NCBI GenBank assembly: GCA_051530055.1
Contig: CM121342.1
Location: forward strand, 5,517,489-5,581,488
Direction: 5' to 3'
DNA from: Neoechinorhynchus agilis
Lineage: Eukaryota > Animalia > Acanthocephala
Length of the DNA stretch: 64,000 nt
Each line of letters opens with the position of its first letter. Within the stretch, counting starts at the first letter, position 1. Shown in pieces: positions 9,317 through 52,652 of the stretch. The translations under genes and the position numbers were made by a program. The notes under the pieces were generated by a model. That model was given only the letters and a program-made list of their open reading frames with translations, was not told the DNA's origin and searched no databases.

Positions 9317-9489
9317 AAGATGTGTACGCAATTTTGATATTGTTCAATTAATAAATTCAGAGTCAGAAGGCGGCGAGTCAGATGCACTTGAGTTACCTTC
9401 GGTTAGTCTTCAATGTAATCAAATCCAGCGAATTTTGGAGAGAACATGAGTTGTATGCGGTGTTAGTCTTCATCTCAAAAGTTTTTTAT

Positions 9490-10145: not shown

Positions 10146-10596
10146 GGAAAGGATCTTAAACATATTCATCTCGAAAGTTTTTTAAATAAATCTTTAAGGG
10201 ATCACATCAATGAGTTTCCTCCCAGAAAATAATAGACGAGTTGTATGCGGTGTTAGTCTTAATCTCGAAGGTTTTTCAAATAAATCTTTAAGGGATCACA
10301 TCAATGAGTTTCCTCCTAGGAAATAATTCTATGTTTTGTGTAAAACGAGGTATGACGGCATTCTTGAACTCAACTTGGAAATATAGAGATCTACTTGGAG
10401 TAACGCTTTATGAAATCTTACAACGACGAATTTAATTTGCCGCAATCTCAAGAGCGACTGTTGATAGAGTTTTCATTAACGGATATTATCCGGTGAGAAT
10501 CAAAGTATCTAAGGAACTTTGTACTTTCTTATAAGCCATTATGTTTTTATCGCTCTACATTTACATTGTAATTTTATTTTTCAATCGGCACGAATC

Positions 10597-10720
10597 TTTT
10601 GTGCCGAACTCGGACGACGACTTGCAGCACAAACAGGGGAGCGAGAGGATTTTCCTGATCCAAAGAATAAGCCTCGCAATCCAACGAGGAAATGCGGTCA
10701 GCGTCCGGGGGACGATTTAA
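10597..10720 (+). mobile_element. C-terminal fragment of a CRE-like (RLE) non-LTR retrotransposon
   Basis: FCAELGRRLAAQTGERE (frameshift) LIQRISLAIQRGNAVSVRGTI*, homologous to the longer copy at 43.9-44.3 kb. Confidence 0.65.
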
Positions 10721-11473
10721 TCATCAACCAAATAAAAACTCGAGATTTGAAAAAAAATTTAAGAGTATTTGTTTCACCTTTAAATAGTCGATGGGATGAA
10801 ATAATTTTCATTTTGATGAAACAAGTTTAAATATCGGATATTAACTTTATCTTAATAATCATATAGGTTTTCAGGGAAGTTCAAATTGTTTGATATGTCG
10901 CGCATAGAGGAGAAATGTTAAGCTTTCGTATGCAAAAAGCTAAAAGTTGGGTTTTTGTAGGTTTTAATCGAAAAACCAGCGTTAGTTTACATTAAAATCC
11001 AATTTAATTCTTCTTGTTCTCCTATATTTCCCATTGAACACCGTAAAAATCCTCGTCTACTCGTTTCAAAGTATCTTTTTTTGCAAAGTTATCGCGTTTT
11101 TCATCTTTTATTCACTGGAATAAGCTTTGATTTGTTTTCCCCTTCACTTGCGTCCGGAGACTAATTTGAAATTTCATGGAGAATTGTATATTTATTTGGC
11201 GAGGATCTCAAAATCCAACAGCAAACAACTGCAGCATAGATCTGATCCTTCTCTCTAGATAAGGAAAACTTGAAATCAACGCTCAATATTTCGGTTTCCC
11301 TCAAATTCTGCATTTGTTCGTCAATTTCCTAAGCTCACATTGTTTCTCCTCAGCGAGGACCTCTTTTTGCCCTAATAAAAAACGCCAACGTACTCACTAA
11401 CGTCTTGCTCGTATTTCGCCCGTGTTTGTTTTATAGCAATTTTAGTTTAAAAAAACCCACCGATATTTCGAAG

Positions 11474-14400
11474 ATGATGTCCACTAATTCTGCTGATGAA
11501 GTAGGCCTATTTCCCCCGTCGTACTTCGCACTTCTTTGTTCAAGGCGTCCTCAGAATGCGATGAGTACCGAAATCCTAAATGGAATTCTACAGCATCCGG
11601 ACACGACAGCCCGACTTAGTCTTTTAAAGGCCCAGCTTTGTGGAGGTTGGGTTTACTCAGGATATTCCCGTTGTTGTTCATCAGACGACTTAGACGAAGC
11701 CTTTGTTAGTCTGAGTGGATGTGGATCTATGGAGTCCAGTGTTCAAAAGCGACCTCGATCGCAGTGTATTTCCTTCATTGACAATGTCTTTTGCGCGTTC
11801 GTTGATCGACTAGCGAACGAGAAACAAATTTGTGGTAAGGTATGGGGACCGCAGGAGCCCGGCTATCGGTGTCATAGCTGTGAAATGAGTCAATTCGCTT
11901 GTCTTTGCACAAGTTGCTTCAATCAAGGAAACCATTTCCAACACGACTACACTGTATTTCATTCACCAGTCGGAGGTGTTTGCGATTGTGGAGATGATAT
12001 TGCCTTCAAATCAGGAACGTTTTGTGCAAAACACGTCGTCGTGAGAAATCAGGAGTCTTCTAAGTTATCCGAACATGAGATGAATGCTTCACTCTTAACA
12101 GCAAAACCATTGTTGGCCATTTTAATGGAACGCATAGTTTGGAATCTTAGAATCATGCACTATTTTGATCTTAGCGATCACGAAGCTTCAATTGTAACGC
12201 TGAATCAAGAGTATGTGGTGTTCAAGGTCGCAAAGGAACTTGGACCAAACTGTATTCCGTCTTGGTACAATTCGGATTTTCTTGAGAAACTTCACCACGG
12301 TTATTGTCTAAACGCAGCAAATCTAAGCACCTCTACCGTTCTACAACACATTATAAAGCCGTGGTTCCGATGAGTTTTGTGGGTCATTCTAGTCGAGTTT
12401 CTTTAAATAGCCCATTTTAAAACCCCTCAAAAAGTCGTGCCACAAAAATAGTCCTTCGAAATTCGTTTTAAGGTTTCTAAGGACCCATGACAAGAGACAA
12501 ATACATTTCCCAATTCCAATCAAACGAATCTGAAATTGTGTTACTTTGTTGCCTGGAAATGAACGATTTGCTATTGAACTTTATATCAACGATTGCAAAG
12601 GACAGTTCTATTCTTGCGAAGGTGATATTGGATACCATGAATAGCAAGAGTGTTAGTTCGTTGGTTCCGCATTTGCTTGTAGATCGCATAGCTCGAACAA
12701 CGGGTCAAGTGACTCGATCCATCTCGAAATCCCATCTTTGTGGAACAGTACTAACCGAGTTCGTGTTCTGGTGCTGTATTACAAGATACCGAAACAATCT
12801 TAAGATGGTGCTGATCACTCTTGCTCTTCATCAGTGCAATAAGAAATCTCTGATCAAGGAGTACCTGGCAACCTATAGCCTCGCAAGTCGCATTCTTCAC
12901 ACAAGCCATGACATTGCAATGATGAACCGGATGATCCACTTCAGTGTAGCCATCTACTGCGACTTTTCACATTTCCACGATACAATGATATACTCCCAAA
13001 TGATCGGAACACTTCTAAACAGTCTTTGGATATCTCCTATTGAATGCGAGAACGGCTTAGTTGCTTGTCCAGTGCGATACGATTCTCGATCTAATAAAGA
13101 TAAAGTGATTGACTCTACTACTCATATGGTCCTTAACCATCTTCACCCTATGATTGAACTCTACTTAAGTTGGCAGGCATCCACTGAGATCATGATCGCC
13201 GTTTGCCATAAGACGGCGGTTGAGGTATTTATAAGCCAACCGAGATTGTTTGGAATGTGGCTGGACGTTGTGACTAGATTGCAAGGAATGACTTACCTTC
13301 GGGAATCCGACTTAAGTGAATCCTCCGACTCGTCGCATACCGTCATTGATGGACTATCGACAACTGAGTCGAAGGTATCAATGACTGAACTTCATGTTTG
13401 TGGAAGTATTCTTGGATCAGTGGCTAGGACCATTAAGCGAAGTATCAGTAACGAAGAAGCGGCGATCGCTAATAACGGTTTCAGTATCCGAAATGATGAT
13501 ACTTTAAGCAAATCGGTCGATATGTTATTCACGACGAACACACAAGGAGTTTTGTCTTTTAGAATGTGTTCATCGTTATGTGAAATGTTTAGCAGAGTCA
13601 TTTGAATTCGTTCGCCCCCCCCCGAGATCAATTAGATCTTTAATCTTTGAAAGAGTTTTTAAGCATACATAATTTATAGTTTCTTCAACGATCCCATTCA
13701 TCGGCGCTGGCCAATTTTTGGGCGAGGAACGAAGTCGATCTTGGATCTCCAGTCGCCGCGTTGATTCGTTTCCCCAAGTCCTTCAGGAGGAGGGCCAAGG
13801 TACGTTTCCACACCGAAGGGGACAAAATGGTAATTTCGGATTAGCTCAATTTTCGAGATTAAATCGTTAACTTATTACAAAAACCATGTAATTTCGGGTT
13901 TTCTTTGGATTCAAATGACTTTGTGATTTACTTACCAGTAATCCAATCAACCCAGCAGTTTTGTTGTCTAACATCTTGCAGGTCCTAAATAACCTTGGCT
14001 CTTGGTTCAACAACGTCGGTCTAACATGCAATCTTATTTCATCACACGAATCAGCTCGCATAGCAAATGTGAATCTTGACCTCTCAGTGACATTCCAACT
14101 CCCTCTACACCGAATCCTCTCAAATTTCTTATTTATTTTGATAGATCGCTTTCGGTTCTCGGCGAACCAGATATTTAAAGTCGTCCAAACACAAATGCAT
14201 GCGGCCACACGACTCCTGGAACTGATCATCGTTCATCCAGTTCAACTCCAGTACGCAATATCCCGATCCGAATCGAATCCCACAGTCAGTCAAAAGCATC
14301 GAAGAAGTTCTCTACTGTACATGTGCACGAAATCATTTGCTGGATCGCCATCGATTGATCGTGATCGATTTCTCATTCAAGCACTCTGTTCAACGCTCCC

Positions 14401-17400
14401 AACTGACATTGTCATGTACACTTTATTGAGAAGATTTCGAGTATTTGGCGATTACTTTGAAAAACCCGGTGACTTGATCGAATACTTTAACGAATTGAAC
14501 AATGACGACTCACGCTTTTCATCGCGAATCCATTGTGAATTGCTTGAATCACTGATGTGTTTTATCGCTCAATTGCTGGCTGTTAGTATCTCACTGGATC
14601 CAATGGATCCAGAAACGCTGACAAAAGAAGCCATTGCAATTTTATGCATTGAAAACAAATCGTTTTCGGAAATAGAGAACTCATTACCTGCATACACACG
14701 AAACTCACGATGCAGAACCATTCTGTGCTCGGTGATTAAATCGATTGCGGAATTCATTCCACCTGAAATCGTTGATGGGAAACCTCGTCCTGGATACTTT
14801 AGGCTCAATGACAACAGTCGATATTTCGATCCCCTTTTCGTTATGTACCGAAGTATTCTCAGACCTGAATGGTATCTGAAAGCAATGGCTCATTATGTGA
14901 AATGGATTAGGAAAGTGAGACCGGATATCCCGGAATCTGTTCTTAGGAAACTATGGCCTCCACTTTGCACCCAAAACGTGAATACGGACTGTAACAGACT
15001 TGTAGAATCTCGATTCCTCCATCAATTCATCTATCTTCTTCTTCGATCGTATTTGAAATGTGATAAGATTGGCGAACGTACACTCAATTTCTGTGTGTAC
15101 TTGCTAAGAATTGGTCTAGAATCAAAGATAACTCGTGACAATGAAGAACCGTCCTTAAAATGTATCTATAAAACGAATGATTTATCGACTAATGTATTTA
15201 TGCCCGTTAAAGATTTAATGTTTACCGAATCTTCACATGAGCGATGTTCTGAGCCAACTTGTATACGATGCAAAGCAAACAAGTCTACAAAAATAGAAGT
15301 GTTTGATGCAAACAACGATTTAAAAGAAACCAGCATTGCAAGTTTTCTTATTGAAATTCTAAATAAAGACAGTCAACATGGAACAACCAAGGCCGTTCTC
15401 AGATTATCGGACCGACAACGCGTCCTAAAGCTCATCGAAAGTGAGCATCTTATTGAAATTGAGAATGGAATTTGTGTTGGAACGGAAATTGCGCACATTG
15501 CAACTCTACTAAGACTTATTCGTAAACTCGGAGAGAGTCAATTTCAGTATTGGCTTAGTCAATTATCTGACAAACCCGTACCTAAGACTTCGATTGTGGC
15601 CGAAAATGCCATCAAGGATAAGATAAGAGAAGAGTTTATTAAAAAACAACTCCAGTTCGCTCAAACCGTCGTTGGGCCAATTGTGAACAATGTTAACGGC
15701 GAATTCGATCGATATTGTGTCATTTGCCGCGAGGATTGCTCAGATCTACCACTGGGACTTGTTTCTTACAACCAACGAACAGACGTGGCTTCGAGGCAAT
15801 TCGTCAGTTTAACTCCAAGGGATAATCAGGAATACGACTGTGTAGACACGGCCTACGCTAAATTATTGCAAGATTTCACAAAAAACGCGGTTTTACTGCG
15901 AGTTCTCAGTGAAGATTTGAAGCTCAAATTGGCCAAATTCGCTACCCTGAGACTAAAAACGCTTAGTTCAAATGAGGAGTATTCAAAAAAGTCAGAATCC
16001 TCAATCGACGTCGGCATCCATGAAACCGCATTTAATTCAACGGAAATCACCGTTACAGATGGATCTTTGGTGACAACACAAACGTTGAAAGTAGAAAATG
16101 ACAGTTCGGCGATCGATACTACCGAAAATCTTTCAAATGATCACGCGGAACATGATGATAATCCAGTGAAAGGTCAAAAAGTGGCTCATTTGTCAAATGC
16201 AAACTTCAACGATTACAATTATTTTCAATCCTGTGGCCATTTTGCTCATCTAAAATGTATAAGTGGTCATTCCGATGGACTTACGGATTTTGAGTGCCCC
16301 GTCTGTCGAAGACGATGCAACTCCATTATTCCTATGATAGGCAAGAGTCTCGAACACAAATCCAAGGAAATTGCATTGGATTTTGTAGATCGCGCTATGC
16401 CTAATATTCATTGGAATGATATGAGTTTTGTAGAGTTTTTAAGAGCTCAACTGGAATCAGATTTATTGGGAGATTTTAGAAGAAGGTCGTATAAATCAAC
16501 GAGGATTATAGGAGAATGTGTTAATATTTTCCGAAGTCTTCTTAATCGACAATCGGTACATTTCAATTATTTATTGTCTAGTCTGGAGTTGCGCTCGTCG
16601 TTGGAGTCATCTTATATCCCGATTCTCTTCTACGACCCATTGATAGTAATGATTAATTTGATTCTGTTTGGAACAAAATCTCCATCCGAAACACTCGATG
16701 AGAATGTTCAGTCTGTGTTTGAACTTAGCTTATCTCAAGCGATGATTGCGATTTCATTGGCGGGTAATAGAAATGAAGTGGATACTTGCGATGAGGTGAG
16801 CCGATGTCTCGAAAGGATCACTACCGAGCTCAAAAGTTGTGGATTTCCGATCAAGGAATCACTACGAAAACCGATCAACCTCAAACATATAATGATGGTT
16901 CTTCAACATAAAATAGTGAGGGGTTTAGCTTTCCTAAGGCTTTCAATTATGGACCCGACGAATCCACCATCTTCAATTGTTTATTTAATTAATAAGTCGA
17001 ACACCATTGATCAGACCGATCAGCCGATTGAATCATTTGCAGAATTATGTGAATGGATTGGTGTGAATGAAACAGAGGCGTGGGACGGAGACAAACTAAG
17101 CGTTAAATGCAGATTTTGGATTGATCAAGTTTTTGAAGGGCGACACGATGCGTCCATGTACTACACTCTGATTGGTGCAGTTTGTAATTTTGAAGGATTT
17201 GCATGTCGAACTCTTCTTCAACCGAATTTAATGCCTCTTCCTGCACGTCTAAATACTCTTCACAAACAAGTGGCTTTATTCACTTGTCCTGACTGCCGTT
17301 CGATGCCCTTTACGAATCATCTTAAATATCGACCGGATGATATTAAGGTTTGCCTTCTATGCTCCATTGCGTACGCTTCTTCAGGCAGTGATTGTGCGGA

Positions 17401-17701
17401 AATCACGTGCTGTGAGAAAATAAGGCGAAAATGGGCAATGCATTCAAGAACTGGGTTGTGTAATAATAAACATTTAGGCTTAGAGATGAACTTAAGGAAT
17501 TCGATTGTCAGAATTTATGGAAACGATGGATCTTCATATGAATGGGGTGGACTCTATCTGGACGAAAATGGAGAAGAAGATGTGGAATTAGGAAGGGGAA
17601 GACCACTTATTTTGAACGAAAAAAGATTTATGTACTTGCAAGAACACTGGATTAATGTTACACTCAATGCTACTTCATCGACGACTACTGATGATGGTTG
17701 A
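11474..17701 (+). CDS. UBR3: UBR3-type E3 ubiquitin ligase (UBR box plus split RING-H2), two inferred introns
   Basis: UBR box CGKVWGPQEPGYRCHSC...CDCGD; TEFVFWC...NRMIHFSV; VTFQLPLHR; CVIC...CGHFAHLKC...CPVCR; C-terminal YLDENGEEDVELGRGRPL. Confidence 0.9.
13695..13832 (-). mobile_element. CRE-like RLE fragment inside the second UBR3 intron
   Basis: Minus strand reads FVPFGVETYLGP..LLKDLGKRINAATGDPRSTSFLAQK; near-identical to 54213-54370. Confidence 0.7.
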
Positions 17702-25169: not shown

Positions 25170-26262
25170 GCTGAAAATACACCAGTCCGGGGAGGAGGAC
25201 GTCGCTGGACGCTTCCATCGCCCTCTTTTTGGTGTGAGTTTTGAACCACCGCGCAAAAAATGTAACCAGCTCGCGAAAAATTAACTAAGAAATATGCCCA
25301 TTTTACATTCTCAACGCGGCTGATTTCTTAGGTTCAAAACTCACACCAAAAAGAGCGAGGGAAGAGCATAAAATCACGCCTAAAAACCCTGAAATATACG
25401 GTCCGAGGAGGAGGACGTCGCTGGACGCTTCCATCGCCCTCTTTTTGGTGTGAGTTTTGAACCACCGCGCAAAAAATGTAACCAGCTCGCGAAAAATAAA
25501 CTAAGAAATATGCCCATTTTTGAATTGATTACATTCTCTACGCGGCTGATTTCTTGGGTTCAAAACTCACACCAAAAAGAGCGAGGGAAGAGCATAAAAT
25601 CACGCCTAAAACCCTGAAATATACGGTCCGAGGAGGACGTCGCTGGACGCTTCCCTCGCCCTCTTTTTGGTGTGAGTTTTGAACCACTGCGCAAAAAATG
25701 TAACCAGCTCGCGAAAAATTAACTAAGAAATATGCCCATTTTTCTCACGCGGCTGATTTCTTGGTTCAAAACTCACACAAAAAGAGCGAGGGAAGAGCAT
25801 AAAATCACGCCTAAAAACCTGAAATATACGGTCCGAGGAGGAGGCGTCGCTGGACGTTCCTCCCTCTTTTGGTGTGAGTTTTGGGGGTTTGTTGGTGGGG
25901 GGGAGTCGCTGGAGTTCCTCCCCTTTTTTGGTGTGAGTTTTGAAACCACTGCGCAAAAAATGTAACCAGCTCGCGAAAAATAAACTAAGAAATATGCCCA
26001 TTTTTGAATTGATTACATTATCTACGCGGCTGATTTCTTGGGTTCAAAACTCAGACTAAAAAGGGCGAGGGAATCGCATAAAATCACGCCTAAAACCCTG
26101 AAATATACGGTCCGAGGAGGACGTCGCTGGACGCTTCCCTCACCCTCTTTTTGGTGTGAGTTTTGAACCACTGCGCAAAAAATGTAACCAGCTCGCGAAA
26201 AATAAACTAAGAAATATGCCCATTTTTGAATTGATTACATTCTCTACGCGGCTGATTTCTTT
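25170..26262. repeat. Repeat family A tandem array, about 216-222 bp units (one about 262), about 4.7 copies, each with an internal inverted repeat
   Basis: GCGCAAAAAATGTAACCAGCTCGCG recurs five times; each unit has TTCAAAACTCACACCAAAAAGAG...CTCTTTTTGGTGTGAGTTTTGAA. Confidence 0.92.
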
Positions 26263-27429: not shown

Positions 27430-28926
27430 ATGGCAGAGTATTTGGCATCGATTTTCGGCACAGAAAAGGACAAGTACGTTTTTGTGGGTTTCGATAACTT
27501 CGTCTACTCAAAAAAAAGGGTAAATTGTTCGTTTTACTTCAAAATCGGAGCATGTCGACACGGCGAGAAGTGTTCTCGGATTCATAATAAGCCAGCATTT
27601 AGTCAGGTTTGAATATTTTCTCTTAGGTTCTGCGGCGGGTTCTCTTTGTCTCAGAATGCTTTAGAATCAGAAACGATTCTTTTTTAATGATTATCGCGTT
27701 TGTGCTTAGACCGTTTTATTGAAAAACCTGTATCTAAATCCCAGGCATACTAATCGCATTTCTGGTAAAGCGCCTTATTCTGATCTAACGCCCGAAGAGG
27801 AACAATCGTATTTTGAGGATTTCTTCGAGGAAGTGTACAGTGAACTAGAGGAAAAGGTGAGTTTGTCGCTGAAAATCAAATGTTTCTTCGTTCGGAAATA
27901 TTTAGTATGGACGCCTCGAAGAACTTATCGTTTGCGACAATCTTGGAGAACATCTTGTCGGAAACATTTATGCAAAGGTTTGTGATAATTGTGCCGAACT
28001 TGTCATTCCCTTTGTTTATTCCGACTGTCTTCCCCCCCCCCAAAAAAACCCACAACAAACGATTGAAGTCCACAAAAAAAATCGGAGTCAACAAACGTGT
28101 TGACAGCCGCAACCTTATTAACCTCCCAGATGATTTGTACGAATTTTCGTCTGCATGCAGACCTCTTATTTTTCCGAGACAACAAAAAAGAATGGGCTCA
28201 TAACTGCCACGAAAGAATTCACCAAATTTTTGAAACGTCGTGATTTTTCCCCGATTTATGATCGCGCGCGATTTGGTTATGAAAAGTGCTTCTGTCAAAG
28301 AAACGAACGTTACGTCATCGTGACGTTGAGGGTCACTAAGGAGCCACGAAAGAATTCCCGGCCGATTTTTAAGATCGCGCGCGATTTGGTTATGGAAAGT
28401 GCTTCTTCTGTCAAAGAAACGAACATTACGTCATCGTGACGTAGAAGGTCCCGATTTTTAAGATTGCGCGCGATTTGGTTATGGAAAGTGCTTCGGTCAA
28501 AGAATAATTGTGCGAGTTTTAGTTTTACAAAGAGACGGACGCAGAGAAGGCGGTACAAGGACTGAATAATCGATGGTTCGACGGAAAACCGGTATACGCT
28601 GAATTGAGTCCGGTTACAGACTTTAAGGAAGCATCCTGCCGGAAGTTTGACCAGGGGTGAGTGTTTCGTAGAGTTTCGGATATGATTACAACATGCGTAG
28701 AGATTGTCAACGAGGCGGATTTTGCAACTTCATGCACATAAAACCCGTTCCTAGACGTATTCTTCAAAGATTAAGATCATATCGAACGGATGATCGATCG
28801 GAGACTAGCGACGAGGATCAAAACCGGAGGTTGTGTGTGTGGGTGCGTTTTTAACCTACAAAAACACATTTTAGATCACACGACAATCGAAGACGAAGTG
28901 GTGATCGACGCAGAAGGAATTCATAG
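27430..28926 (+). CDS. U2AF1: U2 snRNP auxiliary factor small subunit, 7 exons
   Basis: [15 protein letters not shown]|[15 protein letters not shown]...SQ|TVLLKNLY...|[24 protein letters not shown]|F...AELSPVTDF...G|[12 protein letters not shown]; all junctions are GT-AG. Confidence 0.96.
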
Positions 28927-29031
28927 TTGTGTTTGTGTTGATTACGGTTTTAGTTGGTCTAGAACAAAAAAAATAGAGCGCTCGCTCAATCCATCGCCGC
29001 CACGAGAAACGATCACTTTCTATTGCGCATA

Positions 29032-29810
29032 TCATCTCTCATACGATTGATTTGATCGCTGATCACTAGGACGATCGCGTTGTTGTTTGGTACGCCATGG
29101 CGAATACGACCTTGACCTGTGTTGTCGTCGTCGTGTGTCGTCGTATCGATTGATTGAAGAAGACCTTCTAAATTTTAGGAATCTGCTAACACACCGGATC
29201 TTGTTGGATCAGCGACACAGCACCATCTATCCTAAATCGCGACGATCCCTCTGTTATCAGCGCGAAAACCGCCCTCCAAACGAAAAACCCTGAATTCGAG
29301 GCTACAATGCCTCTTTAAAAACTTACTTTCGTCCGTTTCGATGAGACCGTTTACGTCCAACGCCTGCTGAAGTATTGCGACCGTATCGAGCGAGATGGAC
29401 TCCGAGTTGTCGACCGTCTAATCGAAATCCGTCCATTTCCTTCATGGCACACATTGCATCGTCTCTTTTAGTAAACCTGAAACGGACGACGAGCGAGATG
29501 AATAGAGAAATAGCGCCGGATCAAACCTAACGAATGCGTATCCGAGACTCTCGTGAGTAACGTGATTCCGGGGAAGATAAACGTCCCCAATCTCCCCGAA
29601 CCCGCAAAACGCCTTGCGTAGCTCGTCCACTCGAGTACTGTACGATATATTGTCCACTTTTAGACTCACAAGATTATCGATGTGTAGCGGTGGACTCCGG
29701 GGATTCCTTCTTCTCCTCGTAGCTGTGGTCCGGTCGTCCGGGGACCTGCTGTTATGACGTCGACCGGACGAAGACTTGTTGTACTCTTCGCTACTATAAC
29801 GACGGCTCAT
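29032..29810 (-). CDS. SRSF2: SR splicing factor SC35-like (RRM plus short RS tail), 3 exons
   Basis: PPLHIDNLVSLKVDNISY...GDVYLPR...GYAFVR|F...MDGFRLDGRQLGVHLARYGR, then an RS-rich last exon. Confidence 0.88.
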
Positions 29811-29887
29811 CTGAAATCGACGGGTGCTTTTGGGCGATTTTAGTACGGAGGCTTTCAAAAGAAGAAAGAATTTTGAAACTATTCTCT

Positions 29888-30592
29888 CTAGAAGATGACA
29901 AAGAGTGCAAATACGACGTAGAACAAGAGACAAGGATATCCGACTAGAATGCGCAATCCTCGTTTAGTTTGTTGATCCGTTACCATAGCGGTTGCTAGTA
30001 ATCTGGCGGCAGCATAAGTGGACCAGCCGATGGCGACTACAACCACGAAAGCGGCCAAAATGCCCGAGTTTAGGTTTGAGAGTTTAAGAATTGGCCAAAC
30101 GAAACTTAGCGCTACGATTGGAAGAAGGCAGTATCCAAGAGCACTCGTTGTAAACGCCAGGGTGATCATTGATGATTGGTTCGTCTTCGAATAGGCAGTG
30201 TCCATTGCGGCCAACAGACCGTACATCAGTAGACAGCCAACGCTTGAGTATCCGTAAATGTAGCCAAAGTAGTGTTTTCCGAGTCCGAATAGAAGAGAAA
30301 ACGCAAACGCAACGATGAACACGAGCGGTCCTGTCAAATCGCTCAAGAGTAATTCGTCACTGGTGCACGACGATGACGCAACGAACGGGTTCATTACGAA
30401 CGCTGTTTGTTTCCAAATCGAACTTAAATCTATTCCTAACTCCTCAAGCAAAGGCTTCTCCTCCTGATCGGTGCTGCTTGGTGCTGTTGGTTGAAAAAAT
30501 GCTTCCGGTCTAACGGGTTTGTAGTTGAACGTCGGCTCACAATGAACAACTGGCCCAGGAACGTAAAATCCATCCGGTGACGTCGGCCGCAT
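29888..30592 (-). CDS. YIPF5: Yip1-domain protein, intronless
   Basis: EEKPLLEELGID, DLTGPLVF, GYIYG, LGYCLLP, YPCLLFYVVFALFVIF. Confidence 0.9.
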   Translation of the reverse strand: MRPTSPDGFYVPGPVVHCEPTFNYKPVRPEAFFQPTAPSSTDQEEKPLLEELGIDLSSIWKQTAFVMNPFVASSSCTSDELLLSDLTGPLVFIVAFAFSLLFGLGKHYFGYIYGYSSVGCLLMYGLLAAMDTAYSKTNQSSMITLAFTTSALGYCLLPIVALSFVWPILKLSNLNSGILAAFVVVVAIGWSTYAAARLLATAMVTDQQTKRGLRILVGYPCLLFYVVFALFVIF

Positions 30593-30843
30593 AGACAACA
30601 CTGTCGTTTGAAGCTGAAACCAAATCGATCATGGAACACTCAATGTGATTCTTTCTCGGCGCTCTGTCAAAAACAAGTTTTCTGTTTGAAATGGTCAAAT
30701 AGTTTATCGGGACTAAGTTTTGTTGTTCGAATCTTCGATAAAATCCTTCGGGTTAGTCAAAGTATAGGTTTAGTGAGCACAGACACCTCTACCAAAAACT
30801 TACAATGATGAGGCGATATTTCCCCTATAAATCAAATGTGCTA

Positions 30844-31286
30844 TTACCGGGGATTATTTTGACCAAAATAAATGCCTGTCATAGTCACTCCGTCGCGTCT
30901 AACCTCGACGCCATCAAAATTGATTTCATGCCCGTCGATGTGGGACACTATTGTCGAGTTTACACCAGACTTTGATTTTGCTCGTATGAGCTCATTGTTC
31001 GTTTGTCCCACATATGAGATAGATTGCAGTTGGAACATGGGCAGCAGGAACATCCTCATTCTTCGATAGTATTCCTTGGAGATTTTGTCACTATCGATTC
31101 GTTCACTGATCAATGGTGTCTCGATCTCACCAGAGGAACATTTTGAGCCTCCTTCATACTTTTAGTTTGCTGAAGATCCAGTTCATATTTGAGTAGTACG
31201 TCATCCGAACTTGTCCGGGCAACGAAACTCAGTCTGCGAGTCCAACCGGATAAACTATCTGACAATGCTTCTTTTAAATTGTACAT
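30844..31286 (-). CDS. Uncharacterised protein of about 128 aa, 2 exons inferred
   Basis: ATG at 31286 opens 52 codons; a 56-nt phase-0 GTGAG..CAAG intron joins the frame of the 89-aa ORF. Confidence 0.45.
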
Positions 31287-31404
31287 TGACTGAAGAAGGC
31301 CCGCTTCCGGGTTCTCTTATATCGAATTTTTTAACTTTTTGCCCTTAATACAAAACAACCAACGTGAACAATTATCAATGTTCGAACTTTTTTTTTGAAG
31401 AAGT

Positions 31405-31620
31405 TTTGTTCGATGTCTTCATTTTTCTTGTTAGAAAAATAAGCCAGTTTCCATTCGCTTTTTTTAAATCACCAAAGAACACAAAAACCACTTTAAAAAA
31501 AAGAATTTAAATGTTCTTTGGTGTAATTGAGAAGAGGTTTCGTTCGATGTCTTCATTTTTCTTGTTAAAAAAATAAGCCAGTTTCCATTCGCTTTTTTTT
31601 AAATCACCAAAGAACGCAAA
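31405..31620. repeat. Direct duplication of about 75 bp at about 134 bp spacing
   Basis: GTTCGATGTCTTCATTTTTCTTGTTA..AAAATAAGCCAGTTTCCATTCGC occurs twice. Confidence 0.8.
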
Positions 31621-31900: not shown

Positions 31901-32697
31901 ATGAGTATCCAGTGGACATTCGCCGCATCGTTCCTCTACACTGAGATCGCCATCGTCTTTATTCTCCTTCTTCCCATATCGCCATTGCTGTGAGTAATCG
32001 AAGCTCTCCTCTGGATTTTGTTGATTCAAGTGATTAAGATGGCGCCGATTTCTTCATTGGAAACTAATCAAAGCTTTGTCCGCCTATGCCAATCTGTACT
32101 TCAATGTCATAATATGCATATTCCTTATGCTTTTCGCTGGTTAGCACTCACAATATTTAAAAGAAAACTAACGGTCGTCGTTGGCACCCATCAACGCTTC
32201 TTCGTTTAGATTCCGTCCGTGAACTAAGGAAATATGCTCGAATCGACGGTTTCCGCGACGTTTCTTTGCCCCACGCCGAACATCATGTTCTCATGAAACA
32301 ATTTAGAGCACAAAGAAACTTTTATATCGCAGGATTCGTGATGTTCTTATGGCTGTGAGTATTTTTTGCCAATAGGATTCAAAAGGCTTTCGAAGAAATC
32401 TCTTTTAGAGTTATATCTCGTCTTATCAAACTCATTTTAAACTCGGCTGCACTAATGGTCCGGGCTGATGCAATGACCAAACAGGCGATGAGTTCCAACC
32501 GTGCAGCTCAACAAATGATGGAAGATGTTGCTAATGCAACCGATTCACAGGAATTGGAAAATAAAATCAAGGATTTGGATATTGTTCATGAGTCACTCAA
32601 GAAAGAGTATGACACCCTCCAAAAAGAGCACGAGAAGCTTCAGAGGAAATTTGATGAACTCACTGTGGTCCATGGCCAAGGTATCAAAACCGATTAG
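31901..32697 (+). CDS. BCAP31: B-cell receptor-associated protein 29/31 family, 4 coding exons
   Basis: MSIQWTFAASFLYTEIAIVFILLLP, FRAQRNFYIAGF, C-terminal coiled coil. Confidence 0.9.
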
Positions 32698-33077
32698 ATA
32701 AAAGACAATGCGTACGTGGGTTTTTTTGAGAAAAATACTGATGGTTCTCTGAATAAATAGAAAGGGAAATCTGTCACGTTTTAACCGAAAGATCACACAC
32801 AAAAGTATTGCGGAGCCTTTTAAGATTAGAGATTCCCATTGGTTAGAAGTAGGAATAAATAATGTTTCTTGCTTTTGGTGTTTACAACTTCTTTAGATCG
32901 CGTCCCCTATCTTGATTGATTTTATTGCTTTCAATAATAAACAGGGTGTGATTCTGCATTCGATTCCTTGGGCAAAACTAAAAGTTTAGCCATCGCTCGA
33001 GGCGAAGGTTCTTCAAAGTCAATGAGCGTTTCGCAGCAAACGGAGAATTCAAACTTTCTTGATAATCATTTCTAGAC

Positions 33078-34076
33078 ATGTCTGAGATTTTGAAGACCTT
33101 TAAGTTTGACAAAGTTTTATCTCAAAACGTAGATAGGAAATCAATAGCGTTATTGGGAACGGTCGGTGCGTCCAACAAAGCAATTTTTATTCTGGAAAAG
33201 GCGCCGTACAACATGGACACAATAAACAATGATTTGCAATTCAACAACAACAACAACAACAACGACGACGACGAACTTACAAATAAATTGGTTCTGCGAC
33301 AAAAAAATGACATTTATTCGAAATACGAGTTCTTTAGTTCAAATGTATCAATTCAGAATATGACGATGATTTACCCCGCGACGGACGCTCATATTTTGAA
33401 ATATTCTTCTACTGAACATGCGTTCATTAAGGAAACTTATGAGATTTACGATAAAGTAGTCCGCGATCACGTGGAGAAAGCAGCGTTAAAGTTGAATTGG
33501 GTTTGGAACATGTTTCGTTTAGAAGAAAATGAATCAAAAGTTGCTGACGGAGAAACAATAATTCTCAATCACAAACAATCAGGAGAAGAGTTCGTTTTAG
33601 CTTACGATTATCAATGGAATGGTGAACAATTGGACGACCTGCATTTGATTGCTATACTTAAAGATTGCTCTCTTCGTTCAATTAGGGATCTTCGAGGAAA
33701 GCACGTCTTAATTGAACGAATAAAAGGTTCTAATTCGTTCAATTGAATAAAGATTTTACTTAAATTAAGAGAACTTTGTCTTCAAGTCATAAAAAAGAGG
33801 TTTGGATTATCACAACAAAACCTACGAATATTCTTTCACTATCTCCCTTCGTTTTATCAACTCCACGTTCATTTTACGAGCATTCCTCTCAATTCTTGTA
33901 GCTGTCAAGTTGAACGAGCTCATTTACTGGACGATGTCATTGAGAATCTAGAAGCGGACCAAGAGTATTATTCGAAACGGAATATAAGGTATCTGTTGAA
34001 AATTTCAGATCCATTGTATCACAAAATCAAGGCGTTTGAATCACAAAAGAGATTGAGTGAAACCGAACAAGTTTAA
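33078..34076 (+). CDS. DCPS: Scavenger mRNA decapping enzyme, 2 exons
   Basis: KAIFILEK, TMIYPATDAHILKY, WVWN, SIRDL, HYLPSFYQLHVHF, VERAHLLDDVIENL; 45-nt intron at 33727-33771. Confidence 0.93.
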
Positions 34077-43237: not shown

Positions 43238-45536
43238 ATGTCCAGTCAGCATTCGGAAATGGAGACAATTCTAAGTAGGATGTCGACGATCAATCTCTTT
43301 GTTACTAAGACAAGTGTATGGCAATCCTTAATGCTTCTGATAAATTCTTCGTTCGGATTTCTTATCCCTCTAACCGCTTTTATCGATCAATATGTTACAA
43401 ACGATAACTACACTTGTAATACTACATTGCGTACTTCTCTTGATTTGATTATCCCTAAGAAAAATGGAGAGTTTGATAAGTGTTTAATTTACGAGAATTT
43501 TACTTCGTTAAATAAACGAACAATCACATGTCCTTCCGGTTATTGGCATGCTTTACCCAATGACCAAACGATTATTGCCACCTTCAACCTACAGTGCAAA
43601 GGAAGTTTCTTACCTCGAATCCCACAAAGCTTGTTTCTTTTTGGTATTGCCGTTGGAGCTATGCTAACCGCAATCTTCGGAGATAGATTTGGAAAGAAGC
43701 CCATTGCACTTATCGGATATTGGTTTAATGTCCTCTGTGGCATTGGATGCAGTCAATCACCCAATATTTACGAGGGGCGAATTTGAAAAGGCTTATCGTC
43801 GCGGTTTCATCTTTAATTCGTTCTCGATGGTTCTTTTAAGTCAAAACGAGGTTTTTTTTCAAATACAATTTATTGAACACACTCACAGCCTCCCGCCAAA
43901 TTCCAGCTTCTCTCCTTTATCGACCGTCGCCATCACGCTGGCAGCATTGCTTCGTTGTACTGCTAGCGAGATATTTTGCCGAAGGAATACGCCTGCTCTT
44001 GAGTCTCCGGTCGTTTCTCTCAATTTCTTCGAGAGATCCTGTAGCAGAGTGCCGAGCGCTCCATACGTCTCTACCCCAAAGGGGACAAAATAGTGAGCCC
44101 TCGACAAGTGAATATATTTCCGTATTTTCCTCCCTTCCGCTGCACTGACGGCGCCACCGGCGATTTCGAGGGAGTAGGGGATGTTGCTGGCTGCGAGGGT
44201 GTCCCAGAGAAGGCATTTGCCCTCCCGCCACGGGAAGACCGAAATTCCATCGGACCCACGGCCGTCTAGTCTACAGAGGTGGGCGGGTTCCAGGATGTTC
44301 GGGAAGTTCGCCGTTCTCAACGCCCGAGAAATTACGTTATTGATCTCAGAATGTCGTGAGAACCTTCCTGCTGACCTTCTGCAGAAACTTTTTTGGTCCC
44401 GTAGCTTTTCAAATTCGGTTCTTTATGTGTACAGTCTATTCCGATTCCTCTCAGGCGTATGCTACGATATGGTCCTCATTCCGTGCTTTGTCCTCGGTGC
44501 AGAAGTGTTCTCAGCCCAATACAGAGGTGTTCCAGGAGTAGTAGCTAATTTTGTATGGAGTCTCGGAATGATGCTACTGAACCTTATTGCTTATTTCGTA
44601 CGACCATGGAGACGTCTTTACATAGCGGCTTATATGCCTCTTCTAATCACGATATCTTACTATTGGTTTATGAATGAAAGTCTATTCTGGCTCGCTGTGA
44701 ACAATGACCATGATCACATTAATCGTATACTCCGACAAGCGTATAAAGTGAACTCTACGAAACCAGAAGAGCAGCTCTTTTACTTGTCTGAGAAAAGTGA
44801 ATCAGACCAAGAGCTGAATTCGTTTGCTCTAACAACAATGATATCCTCAGCCCGAAAAAGCATGAAAGCCATCACATCTTCTCGTCCGTACGCATTTTCC
44901 CTTTTTTTCGGATGTCTCATAATGTCTCTTGGAACGTTCCTATACTGGGGATTCACTTTGTCAGCAGCCATGTTCTCAAACAATCTCTATCTACAACTGT
45001 TCATTACGGCAGCTGTCGAAATTCCTAAAATAGTAGTATGCAGTGTTGCCACAAAATACTTTGGACGAAAAACGCTTCTTCTTAGCAGCCATGTCGTGAT
45101 TGCTGCGATCGCTATAACATTCGGATTCCTCCCAGATAACAAAAGGAACGCTCTCAATTCAATCAATCATATCGCCAAATTCATGGCATCGGTCAATGTC
45201 GATTTCATCTGGATATACGTCCCAGAACTCTTCCCTACCAGATATAGACAATTTGGATTCGGAGTAGCAATGGTGCTCAGTCGGACAATCGCTGCATTCT
45301 GTCCTCTTCTAGAAAATAGCATTCGAACACAACGATTACTCACAATGAACGTTATCGCTACACTCGCGCTCGTAGCCGCTGGTGGCATTATCTTCTTACC
45401 GGAAACAAAGATACACACAATGCTACAATTATCCGACATGAAATCAATGAAGACAAACGCAGATCCATTCTTCAAAGGAATTAAAAACATTATCAATAAA
45501 TTCAAATGGACGGACGGAAATGAAGAAAAAAATTGA
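43238..45536 (+). CDS. SLC22-type organic cation/anion MFS transporter, interrupted by a 653-bp insertion
   Basis: Large first loop, GDRFGKKP, FVLGAEVF, ESLFWL, ELFPTRYRQFG, LPETK. The flanks join as PNIY-VYSLFRFLSG when the insert is removed. Confidence 0.85.
43771..44423. mobile_element. Non-autonomous TIR element (Tc1/mariner-type, TA duplication)
   Basis: TA|CGAGGGGCGAATTTGAAAAG at the left end, CTTTTCAAATTCG GTTCTT|TA at the right; 13-bp perfect inverted core. Confidence 0.65.
43851..44330 (-). mobile_element. 5'-truncated CRE-like retrotransposon with RLE domain, AATAAA and short poly(A)
   Basis: SDGISVFPWREGKCLLWD...RKIRKY...FVPFGVETYG...ISLAVQRSNAASV, stop at 43883, then AATAAA and an A-run on the minus strand. 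Confidence 0.8.
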
Positions 45537-46333: not shown

Positions 46334-47817
46334 TCAATACTCTTTATCTTCGCCATCATCGTCATCTACGGAATCCAGCCCAACTTCCTCATAATCCTTT
46401 TCCAATGCAGCCAAATCTTCTCTTGCCTCTTGAAACTCTCCTTCCTCCATTCCTTCACCGACATACCAATGAACAAATGCCCGTTTTGCATACATTAAAT
46501 CAAACTTATGATCCAATCGAGCCCATGCTTCAGCAATGGCGGTTGTGTTGGACAACATACAAACGGCACGGGGTACTTTAGCCATATCGCTACCGGGCAC
46601 AACAGTCATAGGCTGATAATTGATTCCCACTTTAAACCCCGTCGGACACCAATCCACAAACTGTATAGCTCGTTTGGTCTTAATAGTGGCGATGGCGGCA
46701 TTAACGTCCTTAGGAACCACATCTCCTCGGAAAAGAAGACAGCATGCCATGTACTTGCCATGTCTTGGATCACATTTTACCATTTGATTGGCCGGGTCGA
46801 ACACTGAACTCGTAATTTCGGCTACACTCATTTGTTCATGAAGCGCTTTCTCGGCCGAAATTATGGGAGCGTAGGTCGCTAGAGGAAAATGGATTCTTGG
46901 ATAAGGGACGAGGTTTGTTTGAAATTCAGTGAGATCGACGTTCAATGCGCCGTCAAATCTTAGACTTGCCGTGATTGAACTCACAATCTGGGCTATGAGT
47001 CTATTAAGACTCGTGTAAGAAGGACGTTCAATGTCGAGATTCTTTCTACAGATATCATAGATCGCTTCATTGTCTACCATGAATGCGCAATCCGAATGTT
47101 CAAGGGTCGTATGAGTCGTCAGAATTGAATTGTAGGGTTCAACTACGGCCGTTGCAATTTGGGGTGCTGGATAGACGGCGAATTCGAGTTTTGACTTTTT
47201 TCCGTAGTCATCGCTGAGTTTTTCCATCAAAAGAGCAGTAAATCCTGATCCTGTTCCACCTCCGAATGAATGAAAGATAAGAAATCCCTGAAGGCCGGTG
47301 CACTGATCGGACAATTTTCGAATTTTGTCCAGTGATTCGTCAATGATTTGATGACCGATAGTGTAGTGTCCTCTAGCGTAGTTGTTGGCAGCATCTTCTT
47401 TATCATTGATGAGTTGTTCTGGATGATAGAGCTGTTTGTATGGGCCAACTCTGATTTCGTCTATCAAATGGGCGATGTGAGAGAAAGAGAGAGGGAAAGA
47501 GCAATTAACCGATTACAGTTGGTTCGAGGTCCACGAAAAGTGCTCTCGGGACGTGTTTTCCCGTTCCGGTATGATTAAAGAAAGTATTGAAACTTTCGTC
47601 TTTCAACACCGGCGGACTATTGGTTGCCATGTGTCCATTTTGTCCGATTCCATGCTCAAGGCAATACAACTCCCAGCACGAGTTTCCGATCTGGGCTCCA
47701 GCCTGTCCGATGTGAATACTGATGCACTCCCTCTAAAAAAAGTAATAATAGACCTGATCAAAATACTCTCTTACCAATCGCCTCATACTAACAAATTTCT
47801 CTCCAAGGACTTACCAT
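46334..47817 (-). CDS. TUBA: Alpha-tubulin, 2 introns, ambiguous first exon
   Basis: [39 protein letters not shown]-terminal EY. Confidence 0.98.
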
Positions 47818-48766
47818 ATATGAATACCCCGAGTCTCTTCTGATTTATATGATGACGGTCTCGTTTGCGTGCTGCGTCTGACTTGAATTCAACAAATTTA
47901 GGTCTCCTTGCTTTTCTTTGGCTTCTGACCTGACACTGGTTGATGAAAAGACAACGTTGAGGTGTGATGAATAGTTGGCGTGTCTCTTCTTTTATGTCGA
48001 ACGTGTGAGCACTTGAGTTTGTCTAGTTTTTGTGTCAAGTGTCTTCTCAGTCGAATGAGAGGCGGAAAGGGGTCACAAACCTTTTTTTGTCAATAAAATG
48101 CGTTTATTAAAGAAACGGGTCAAGATTCCAGTCTCTCAAACAGGGGAAAAACACGTCAGGTAACGACAATCGAATGGAGACTTTATGAAAAACTAATTTA
48201 ACTCCAAAATTTTAACCAGATCAACTTAGTATCGAAAATGTGAGTACCCGCGATAACATTTTTTCGATTAAAAAGACGTTCTGCGATTTTCGTCGGGTTT
48301 TTTGTAAAGGTTCGACCTCTAAACACAAGGCTTTCATCGGGCAAACACTCTAATCTCAAAATTACCCGTTTTTACTAACATATTTTAAACACCTCATTGA
48401 CAGCACAAAAAATTAATATGCTTTTGTTTGATAAGAGAAAAACACACCAAACCGAATGACTCTATTAAACGAGAGACTCAAATACCTGGAATTCTACTAT
48501 AAAAAATAAGCTCCTGGAATGATCTATAACGGGTTTTCTCATTAAATTTCCGTTCAACAAAGTAAACTTTTATTTTCGGTTGGTTACTAAAAGATTGTAT
48601 AGCAGCACCACGACGCTGTTAATTACTAGCTCCCGCGTGTTTTAATCGATAAAAATAGGAAATCATTAGCGATTCTTGGTCTGTCAACAATTTCAAATTC
48701 TTTGAAGTTTGTGCTCAATGAAAAAAAATCGAAAGAGATTATATATGGACGCTAAAAAGAAATATA

Positions 48767-51286: not shown

Positions 51287-51441
51287 CGTCCCTATCTAAA
51301 AGCGACAAATTCGAAGATCCATCGAGTCTGACTGCGAGGACTAACCGTTAACAACTTGAGTTTCGAAACCACAAACGATTCCAGGGGTCTCAGAGGACTA
51401 ATGCTTTGTTTCTGCGTTCTTTCGTATCATTAATCGAACAA

Positions 51442-52611: not shown

Positions 52612-52652
<41 letters not shown>

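What the first reader, a model, noticed from the sequence alone, without database searches (positions are those of the whole stretch)
29032..31296. Candidate three-gene operon: unknown ORF, YIPF5, SRSF2
Three same-strand genes are separated by about 251 nt and only 77 nt. Each has a YTTCAG within 21 nt of its ATG, and SRSF2 reads TTTCAG|ATG. The 77-nt spacer contains a U-rich tract (TTCTTTCTTCTTTTG on the sense strand) and no AATAAA, leaving little room for a promoter plus a UTR intron. This resembles nematode and tunicate operons resolved by trans-splicing. Functionally unrelated operon members are normal in those systems.
Basis: partly seen in the sequence, partly recalled or inferred. Interest (0 to 1): 0.7.

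Follow-up and report, generated by a model that had tools for sequence, protein, structure and literature searches.

The report
Two-gene operon candidate, third gene spurious
In the small genome of the thorny-headed worm Neoechinorhynchus agilis, a YIPF5-like gene and an SRSF2-like gene lie 77 bases apart on one strand, with a splice-acceptor motif touching the second gene's start codon; this fits an operon resolved by trans-splicing but does not prove one, and the supposed third gene is debris of a repeated element.

Summary
The window is Neoechinorhynchus agilis (Acanthocephala), chromosome CM121342.1. A Yip1-family (YIPF5-like) CDS runs 30592-29888 and an SRSF2-like CDS runs 29810-29032, both on the minus strand, 77 nt apart. 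TTTCAG abuts the SRSF2 ATG. The spacer has a pyrimidine tract and no AATAAA.

The first "gene" (31286-30844) is not a gene. It consists of two inverted fragments of a ~405-nt repeat family carrying a frameshifted GIY-YIG remnant. Its "CTTCAG...ATG" is the antisense of that repeat. The public annotation uses part of the repeat as exon 1 of YIPF5, cis-spliced to the TTTCAG in front of the YIPF5 ATG.

What remains is a two-gene candidate. The 77-nt gap is far below the other same-strand gaps in the window (380-2311 nt). Acceptor-like motifs within 30 nt of start codons are a general feature here (8-9 of 21 genes against 8% background). That pattern would fit widespread leader trans-splicing, known in bdelloid rotifers and, as far as I could find, not reported in acanthocephalans.

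No transcript, SL RNA gene or synteny evidence could be obtained. I put an SL-resolved operon at about 0.4. Rivals are an internal promoter, a shared 5' exon and chance. The public RNA-seq would decide.

The parts
29032..29810 (-). SRSF2-like gene (annotated ACOME3_005923, 189 aa). Exons 29810-29527, 29476-29327, 29167-29032. Introns 50 nt (GTTTGA...TTTCAG) and 159 nt (GTAAGT...ATTTAG).
   Evidence: model; 100% identical to the annotated protein; RRM_1, E=7e-15; best PDB hit SRSF2 2lea, E=6e-26; N-terminus matches the relative P0011.
29811..29816 (-). TTTCAG directly abutting the SRSF2 ATG: a 3' splice-acceptor consensus and candidate trans-splice (or cis 5'UTR) acceptor.
   Evidence: It has the same form as confirmed intron acceptors in this window (TTTCAG, TTTTAG, GTTTAG).
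29811..29887 (-). 77-nt spacer between the YIPF5 stop and the SRSF2 ATG. No AATAAA or ATTAAA and no significant RNA structure.
   Evidence: fold z-score -0.07.
29856..29870 (-). Pyrimidine tract TTCTTTCTTCTTTTG, flanked by the 8-nt inverted repeat TTTCAAAA/TTTTGAAA (29878-29871 and 29860-29853).
   Evidence: Function not tested.
29839..29844 (-). ACTAAA, the only one-mismatch variant of AATAAA in the spacer, 44 nt after the YIPF5 stop. The same hexamer lies 78 nt after the SRSF2 stop. It could be a weak poly(A) signal or a TATA-like box 34 nt before the SRSF2 ATG.
   Evidence: Both roles are inferred only.
29888..30592 (-). YIPF5-like (Yip1 family) CDS, 234 aa from Met 30592, with no intron in the CDS.
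   Evidence: homologues with PF04893. (homologues start at the M..DGFY motif and end at the same C-terminus).
30614..30619 (-). TTTCAG 21 nt before the YIPF5 ATG. It is the acceptor of the annotated 290-nt cis intron.
30614..30903 (-). Intron of the public (BRAKER) YIPF5 model, with donor GAG|GTTAGA at 30903. A stronger donor, CATT|GTAAGT, lies at 30803.
   Evidence: RNA support for either donor was not checkable here.
30695..31086 (-). One copy (unit positions 92 to 450) of a ~405-411-nt N. agilis repeat carrying a frameshifted GIY-YIG nuclease remnant.
   Evidence: (P0007 GIY-YIG, E=5e-13).
31225..31301 (+). Inverted piece (unit positions 1-78, 83-88% identical to copies in L004) of the same repeat.
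31316..31321 (-). TATAAG, the only TATA-like hexamer upstream of the unit. It is a possible core promoter for a transcript starting near 31290.
   Evidence: Inference only.

Best explanation
This is a two-gene, head-to-tail unit in the 46-Mb genome of the acanthocephalan Neoechinorhynchus agilis: a Yip1-family (YIPF5-like) gene followed after 77 nt by an SRSF2-like splicing-factor gene.

The most likely mechanism is as follows. All steps are inferred.
1. Both genes are transcribed from one promoter upstream of YIPF5, in the 1.3-kb divergent region shared with Bap31. That region is now largely made of repeat fragments.
2. The YIPF5 mRNA is cleaved and polyadenylated inside the spacer.
3. The SRSF2 mRNA gets its 5' end by splicing at the TTTCAG that touches its ATG, most plausibly by addition of a spliced leader in trans. 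Its whole 5' UTR is then the leader.

It is decayed repeat sequence that may supply 5' UTR exon(s) to YIPF5, cis-spliced to the TTTCAG 21 nt before the YIPF5 ATG.
For: Shown:
- Gene identities and exact models.
- The 77-nt gap, against 380, 980, 1093, 1106, 1246, 1337 and 2311 nt for the other real same-strand neighbours in the window.
- TTTCAG|ATG matches the confirmed intron acceptors of this genome.
- There is no GT[AGT]AG donor in the 630 nt upstream of that acceptor, 30440 to 29811. A nearby cis 5'UTR intron would therefore need a weak donor.
- An unspliced transcript starting in the spacer would have a very short leader.
- No canonical poly(A) signal lies in the spacer. Seven of 18 other listed genes have AATAAA or ATTAAA within 60 nt of the stop.
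- Acceptor-like motifs (at least 3 T in 4 nt, then YAG) lie within 30 nt of 8-9 of 21 annotated starts, against 7.9% for all ATGs (P about 1e-4 to 1e-5). This is the pattern of organisms that trans-splice many mRNAs.

From the literature:
- Bdelloid rotifers add a 23-nt SL to more than 50% of their mRNAs (PMC1925144, PMC3795323). From my own knowledge, bdelloids are closer to acanthocephalans than monogonont rotifers are.
- The genome is compact: 46.2 Mb, 13,655 genes, 31.6% coding (PMC12690905).
Against: - No transcript evidence of any kind could be reached. Neither gene has a copy from a transcriptome assembly in the protein collection.
- No SL RNA gene was found. The bdelloid SL has no match in the window, Rfam has no SL match even at E<=5, and the one regex candidate at 9372-9475 is unstructured and single-copy. 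A 64-kb window would rarely hold one, so this is weak evidence.
- No paper in the searched library reports SL trans-splicing or operons in acanthocephalans. Operons had not been reported for rotifers as of 2021 (PMC7986045), and the monogonont Brachionus showed no SL (PMC1925144).
- SRSF2's own 3' end also lacks AATAAA.
- Compact promoters seem to exist here: tubulin has TATAAAT 32 nt before its ATG.
- The sample is one pair in one window, chosen because it is tight.
- No synteny support: two distant YIPF5 loci from metagenomes have no SRSF2 neighbour.
Confidence: 0.4

Rival explanations
1. Independent transcription unit. SRSF2 has its own promoter inside the 3' part of the YIPF5 coding region or its 3' UTR. 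The TTTCAG|ATG is then the acceptor of a short cis 5'UTR intron (for example the 66-nt GTTTCA...TTTCAG, 29879-29811), or of an outron that receives a spliced leader. Either way there is no polycistronic precursor.
For: - Introns here are short, mostly 42-70 nt, and donors are loose (GTTTGA, GTTAAT, GTTAGC). AATA|GTTTCA at 29879 could therefore serve, giving a 66-nt intron.
- PSF2 shows a similar possible 45-nt 5'UTR intron, GAG|GTTTAC...CCCTCAG|ATG.
- The tubulin TATAAAT 32 nt before its ATG suggests compact promoters.
- The convergent SRSF2 and zf-CCCH genes end 105 nt apart, so overlapping or very tight units are tolerated here.
Against: - GTTTCA lacks the G at +5 and is a common hexamer in AT-rich DNA.
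- The first exon and promoter would lie inside conserved YIPF5 coding sequence.
- No GT[AGT]AG donor lies between 30440 and 29811.
- All other same-strand gaps in the window are at least 380 nt.
Confidence: 0.3
2. Shared 5' exon with alternative cis-splicing, like the cholinergic ChAT/VAChT locus. One promoter near 31290 makes a non-coding, repeat-derived first exon. Its donor (31130, 30903 or 30803) joins either the acceptor at 30614 (YIPF5 mRNA) or the acceptor at 29811 (SRSF2 mRNA, with YIPF5 inside a ~1-kb intron). No spliced leader is needed.
For: - Three donor-like sites lie upstream of YIPF5, including a perfect GTAAGT at 30803.
- The public model already splices 30903 to 30614.
- Both downstream ATGs sit just behind strong acceptors.
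Against: - A 1-kb intron would be long for this genome. The confident introns are 42-159 nt and the annotated YIPF5 intron is 290 nt.
- This model does not explain why acceptor motifs precede so many unrelated start codons.
- No transcript data were available.
Confidence: 0.1
3. No splicing at all. Either the motif is a coincidence or an initiator-like element (TCA+1G) about 30 nt downstream of a TATA-like ACTAAAAT, giving an almost leaderless SRSF2 mRNA. Or the two ORFs sit on one mature dicistronic mRNA.
For: - ACTAAAAT begins 34 nt before the SRSF2 ATG, close to the position of tubulin's TATAAAT at 32 nt.
- TTTCAGATG as a 9-mer occurs twice in the window against 1.3 expected.
Against: - A leader of 0-5 nt would make ribosomes skip the first AUG. 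The next in-frame Met lies inside the RRM.
- The motif matches intron acceptors including the T-run.
- The other genes with such motifs have no TATA-like box about 30 nt upstream.
- The probability that a given ATG is directly preceded by TTTCAG is below 1e-3. This is my estimate from base composition, not a computed value.
Confidence: 0.15

Closest known systems
Caenorhabditis elegans operons (SL2-resolved polycistrons)
   Same: Same-strand genes about 100 nt apart, functionally unrelated housekeeping members, TTTCAG acceptor next to the downstream ATG, and a U-rich tract in the intercistronic region.
   Different: No SL1/SL2-type RNA or any SL is known for this species. The upstream gene has no AAUAAA. 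The whole stop-to-ATG distance, 3' UTR included, is 77 nt, which is shorter than the usual nematode arrangement. Co-transcription is untested.
Tunicate operons (Ciona, Oikopleura) and flatworm operons with a single SL and almost no intercistronic region
   Same: Very short gaps in a compact genome. 3' end formation of the upstream gene and acceptor use of the downstream gene must happen within a few tens of nucleotides (ACTAAA lies 22 nt before the TTTCAG).
   Different: Those systems have demonstrated SL RNAs and SL-tagged downstream mRNAs. Nothing of the kind is shown here.
Chaetognath operons (Paraspadella gotoi; PMC12460157)
   Same: A gnathiferan relative. Operons there are called as same-strand genes less than 250 bp apart with SL reads, and 18% of genes are operonic. 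The pair here meets the distance criterion.
   Different: The SL-read criterion is untested. That paper argues the chaetognath origin is independent.
Bdelloid rotifer SL trans-splicing (23-nt SL GGCTTATTACAACTTACCAAGAG; PMC3795323, PMC1925144)
   Same: The closest clade with a proven SL. About half of mRNAs are trans-spliced there, similar to the share of starts with acceptor motifs here (8-9 of 21).
   Different: Operons are not reported for rotifers (PMC7986045). The bdelloid SL sequence is absent from the window, and I found no report of any SL in an acanthocephalan.
Cholinergic locus (ChAT/VAChT, C. elegans cha-1/unc-17): shared first exon with alternative cis-splicing
   Same: Two genes, one promoter, and a downstream ORF reached by splicing. 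Donors upstream of YIPF5 and acceptors before both ATGs would allow it.
   Different: In that locus one gene is nested in the first intron of the other and the two are functionally linked. Here the genes are unrelated and the arrangement is only a possibility.

Membership tests
SL-resolved eukaryotic operon | Two or more same-strand genes with a very short intergenic distance (under about 250-1000 nt) | tested here: met
   77 nt from stop to ATG. The other same-strand gaps in the window are 380-2311 nt.
SL-resolved eukaryotic operon | 3' splice acceptor just upstream of the downstream gene's start codon | tested here: met
   TTTCAG|ATG at 29816-29808, the same form as confirmed intron acceptors.
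SL-resolved eukaryotic operon | Single promoter and a polycistronic precursor | not testable with these tools
   No RNA data in reach. Neither protein has a transcript-derived copy in the collections.
SL-resolved eukaryotic operon | Downstream mRNA carries a spliced leader, and the organism has SL RNA genes (leader, GT donor, Sm site) | tested here: inconclusive
   No match to the bdelloid SL. No Rfam SL family at E<=5. One regex candidate rejected. Only about 77 kb of the 46-Mb genome could be read.
   The first ORF is repeat-derived, contains a frameshifted GIY-YIG remnant and is partly antisense to the repeat. It has no other homologue.
Yip1 family (YIPF5/YIPF7/Yip1p type) | Yip1 domain (PF04893) with the PLLEELGI motif and a multi-pass hydrophobic C-terminal half | tested here: met
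   Homologues at E=5e-32 to 8e-19 carry PF04893. The invariant motifs PLLEELGI, DLTGPL, FGY.YG and LGY.LLP are conserved. The protein itself falls below the Pfam threshold.
SR protein SRSF2 (SC35) type | Single N-terminal RRM closest to SRSF2, plus an Arg/Ser-rich tail | tested here: met
   RRM_1 E=7e-15. The best three PDB hits are SRSF2 (two entries) and SRp46, E=6e-26 to 8e-24. The tail is short and R/S-rich, and there is an extra R/S-rich N-terminal stretch.
GIY-YIG-bearing repeat (possibly derived from a Penelope-like retroelement; that assignment is from my own knowledge and untested) | Multi-copy in the genome, with a GIY-YIG nuclease motif in related copies | tested here: met
   At least 15 tandem units of ~405 nt in L004 on the same chromosome. 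P0007 hits GIY-YIG at E=5e-13. The window copy is frameshifted between PCSNC and YVGQTNN. No reverse-transcriptase part was looked for.

The most novel reading that the evidence does not exclude
Neoechinorhynchus agilis, and so Acanthocephala, trans-splices a leader onto roughly half of its mRNAs and resolves true polycistronic operons such as YIPF5-SRSF2. This would be the first report of SL trans-splicing in acanthocephalans and of operons anywhere in Syndermata. It would place the origin of the syndermatan SL at or before the common ancestor of bdelloids and acanthocephalans.
Probability: 0.4. Interest if true: 0.6.

Novelty: new member of a known kind. Interest (0 to 1): 0.4.

Why it matters
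Spliced-leader trans-splicing and operons are scattered patchily over animal phyla, and whether they arose once or many times is still argued. Within Syndermata only bdelloid rotifers have a proven leader. The monogonont Brachionus showed none, and operons have not been reported for rotifers. If an acanthocephalan with a 46-Mb genome uses both, that would add a parasitic lineage to the list. It would also tie genome compaction to operon formation once more, and explain some fused or oddly extended gene models in the public annotation. The question is cheap to settle, because 74 mRNA-seq libraries of this species have been described (PMC12690905). Taken alone, the locus is one tight gene pair plus a mis-read repeat, which is modest.

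Tried and rejected
1. The 'unknown ORF' as a gene. I built a spliced 128-aa model (57-nt GT..AG intron, 31130-31074). It had no Pfam, PDB or word-index homologue. The full HMMER scan hit only the annotated YIPF5 extension and P0007, a GIY-YIG repeat product of the same chromosome. The other three hits are unrelated repetitive proteins that match on a short repeated stretch. Rejected.
2. Direct transcript evidence. I looked for transcriptome-derived copies of both proteins in the 15-billion-protein collection and found none. The paper's supplement has no entry for either gene.
3. SL RNA gene. The bdelloid SL has no match at up to 3 mismatches. Rfam gave nothing at gathering threshold or at E<=5. 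A donor-plus-Sm-site regex gave 7 hits in the window. The best, 9372-9475 with AAUUUUGG, is unstructured (z=+1.3) and single-copy. Rejected. The duplicated 'GGCTTATTTTT' element at 31397-31620 shares only 8 nt with the rotifer SL and has no donor. Rejected.
4. Structure in the spacer. The fold is no better than shuffles, z=-0.07.
5. Synteny. A metagenome scan with the 62%-identical relative P0002 found only two distant YIPF5 loci (38-45% identity), without an SRSF2 neighbour. This is uninformative for Syndermata.
6. Exhaustive intron reconstruction. It gave unique or clearly best solutions only for tubulin, Bap31 and SRSF2. The other genes were ambiguous, and two runs timed out. There are too few introns for a splice-site matrix, so candidate donors could not be scored.
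7. AATAAA absence as evidence. It was discounted once one search showed no minus-strand AATAAA from 31958 to 28020.
Full report
ORIGIN OF THE WINDOW. The YIPF5-like ORF is 100% identical to part of 'hypothetical protein ACOME3_005924 [Neoechinorhynchus agilis]'. The encoding contig is chromosome CM121342.1 of GCA_051530055.1. N. agilis is an eoacanthocephalan fish parasite. Its assembly is 46.2 Mb with 13,655 BRAKER genes predicted from mRNA-seq hints, and 31.6% of it is coding (PMC12690905). The window is therefore eukaryotic and gene-dense, with short introns. Three look-ups gave the public gene calls for nearly all of the window.

THE OBSERVATION. On the minus strand:
- An ORF pair runs 31286-31110 and 31113-30844.
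- A 234-aa ORF runs from ATG 30592 to stop 29888.
- A gene starts at ATG 29810 and ends at 29032.
- The gaps are 251 nt and 77 nt.
- YTTCAG ends 3, 21 and 0 nt before the three ATGs.
- The 77-nt spacer reads AGAGAATAGTTTCAAAATTCTTTCTTCTTTTGAAAGCCTCCGTACTAAAATCGCCCAAAAGCACCCGTCGATTTCAG and has no AATAAA.

THE TWO REAL GENES.
SRSF2-like gene:
- Splicing out a 50-nt intron (GTTTGA...TTTCAG) and a 159-nt intron (GTAAGT...ATTTAG) gives 189 aa.
- This is 100% identical to the annotated ACOME3_005923.
- It has one RRM (E=7e-15).
- Its best solved relatives are human SRSF2 and SRp46 (E=6e-26 to 8e-24).
- A 55%-identical relative starts at the same Met.
YIPF5-like gene:
- Homologues at E=5e-32 to 8e-19 carry Pfam Yip1 and share PLLEELGI, DLTGPL, FGYIYG and LGYCLLP.
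- They begin close to the M..DGFY motif, so Met 30592 is the likely true start.
- The public model adds 59 residues at the N-terminus (exon 31059-30904, intron 30903-30614). No homologue has a counterpart for this extension.

THE FIRST 'GENE' IS REPEAT DEBRIS.
- A full HMMER scan with the 89-aa ORF found the annotated YIPF5 extension and P0007. The three other hits are unrelated repetitive proteins.
- P0007 is another N. agilis 'protein' from the same chromosome and has two GIY-YIG nuclease domains (E=5e-13).
- P0007 lies in an array of at least 15 tandem units of about 405-411 nt.
- The window holds one unit on the minus strand (31086 to 30695). In it the nuclease motif is split by a frameshift: PCSNC is in one frame and YVGQTNN in another.
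- A 77-nt piece of the same unit lies in the opposite orientation at 31225-31301, 83-88% identical to the array copies.
CTGAAG is conserved across the family, and the CAT arose by a substitution in this copy.
- The spliced 128-aa model has no Pfam, PDB or other homologue.
The three-gene version therefore fails. The repeat may still be transcribed. A TATAAG lies at 31321-31316, and donor-like sites lie at 31130, 30903 and 30803, the last a perfect GTAAGT. The annotated cis intron ends at the TTTCAG before the YIPF5 ATG. That acceptor is thus more simply read as a cis 5'UTR acceptor. I could not check which donor the RNA-seq supports.

HOW UNUSUAL THE PAIR IS.
- Real same-strand neighbours in the window are 380, 980, 1093, 1106, 1246, 1337 and 2311 nt apart from stop to ATG.
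- Gaps of 113 and 309 nt lie between three annotated 'genes' that are pieces of one UBR1-type ligase.
- The 77-nt gap is therefore an outlier. It is, however, one pair, and it was chosen for being tight.
- TTTCAG|ATG has the form of the confirmed intron acceptors here: TTTCAG, TTTTAG, GTTTAG and ATTTAG. The introns themselves are mostly 42-70 nt.
- A given ATG would be directly preceded by TTTCAG less than once in a thousand (my estimate from base composition).

A GENOME-WIDE HABIT.
- Acceptor-like motifs (at least 3 T in 4 nt, then YAG) lie within 30 nt upstream of 9 of 21 annotated starts. All ATGs in the window show 7.9%, and a control interval 100 nt further upstream shows 2 of 21.
- One of the nine is an artefact. 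The annotated tubulin start is wrong, and the canonical MRECISIH is obtained from ATG|GTAAGT at 47817.
- With 8 of 21, P=1e-4. Without the two genes of the finding, 5 of 12 conserved genes give P=1.5e-3.
The pattern itself is what one sees in animals that trans-splice about half of their mRNAs. Short cis 5'UTR introns could give it too, and I could not separate the two from sequence alone.

WHAT IS KNOWN.
- Bdelloid rotifers add a 23-nt leader to more than half of their mRNAs. The monogonont Brachionus showed none (PMC1925144; SL sequence in PMC3795323).
- A 2021 survey states that operons had not been reported for rotifers (PMC7986045).
- Chaetognaths, also gnathiferans, have 18% of their genes in operons (PMC12460157).
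- Four literature searches found no report of trans-splicing or operons in an acanthocephalan.

WHAT COULD NOT BE SHOWN.
- No transcript-derived copy of either protein exists in the collections.
- No SL RNA gene turned up in the roughly 77 kb I could read.
- The spacer has no significant fold.
- The only related loci found are distant and lack an SRSF2 neighbour.
The minus strand has no AATAAA from 31958 to 28020, so SRSF2's own 3' end lacks it as well. Both genes have ACTAAA 44 and 78 nt after their stops. Tubulin has a TATAAAT only 32 nt before its ATG, so core promoters can be very compact here.

VERDICT. The core of the finding survives as a two-gene candidate. My estimates:
- About 0.4: the pair is co-transcribed and SRSF2 receives a leader in trans.
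- About 0.3: SRSF2 has its own promoter inside or just after YIPF5, with cis or trans splicing at the acceptor.
- About 0.1: a shared 5' exon is alternatively cis-spliced to the two acceptors.
- About 0.15: there is no splicing at all.
All mechanistic steps are inference. Only the anatomy, the gene identities, the repeat origin of the first ORF and the motif statistics are shown. If the operon is real, it is a new member of a known kind in a phylum where it has not been described. The described RNA-seq would settle it in an afternoon.

Noticed in passing
window 8753-62412 (annotated start codons; examples at 22334(-), 22941(+), 27430(+), 33078(+), 51286(-), 51787(+)): T-rich YAG acceptor-like motifs lie within 30 nt upstream of 8-9 of 21 annotated start codons, against 7.9% background. 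This hints at widespread trans-splicing or short 5'UTR introns in this acanthocephalan.
   Followed up: partly
window 31901-33746 (+): Bap31 and DcpS are same-strand neighbours 380 nt apart. Bap31 has AATAAA 55 nt after its stop, and DcpS has TTTCTAG 2 nt before its ATG. This is a second, looser operon-like pair.
   Followed up: no
window 31397-31620: A local direct duplication (two ~100-nt copies, 134-nt spacing, 94-96% identical) lies between the repeat debris and Bap31. It occurs nowhere else in the window or the fetched loci, and its role is unknown (promoter region?).
   Followed up: partly
window 10410-17701 (+): Three consecutive annotated genes (zf-UBR 336 aa; 372 aa with no domain; WHD_UBR1/PRT6_C 1256 aa), with gaps of 113 and 309 nt, look like one UBR1-type E3 ligase gene split by the annotation.
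   Followed up: no
window 47786-47849 (-): The annotated alpha-tubulin start (MRRL...) is probably wrong. ATG at 47817 followed directly by a GTAAGT intron gives the canonical MRECISIH. A TATAAAT lies 32 nt upstream of that ATG, implying a very short 5' UTR.
   Followed up: partly
L004 5075-10970 (chromosome CM121342.1, about 1 Mb from the window): A tandem array of at least 15 units of ~405 nt encodes GIY-YIG fragments. It is annotated as three protein-coding genes (300, 402 and 270 aa), which are probably satellite or repeat artefacts.
   Followed up: partly
window 28926-29032: The convergent zf-CCCH/Torus gene (+) and SRSF2 (-) stop 105 nt apart, with no canonical poly(A) signal on either strand. 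Their 3' UTRs must be very short or must overlap.
   Followed up: no
window 59066-61908; also 6700-7417, 9580-10016, 25192-25883, 49703-50467, 53437-53973: There is a 168-nt satellite of 17 copies (97% matches), and five short arrays with periods of 216-242 nt. Several small annotated ORFs without domains (for example the 113-aa gene at 49860-50201) lie inside such arrays.
   Followed up: no
window 54042-54173 (+); also 43893-44057 and 51435-51585: A ~130-nt hairpin element has sub-threshold plant-miRNA-model hits (MIR4239, 43 bits against a gathering score of 100) and copies in L004. Two further dispersed repeats are about 82% identical to L004. These are probably MITE-like elements.
   Followed up: no
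window 52211-52684: A hexamer microsatellite (ACCACC, 79 copies) overlaps the annotated 186-aa (+) gene and lies just downstream of the stop of the 155-aa (-) gene. Both gene calls are doubtful.
   Followed up: no
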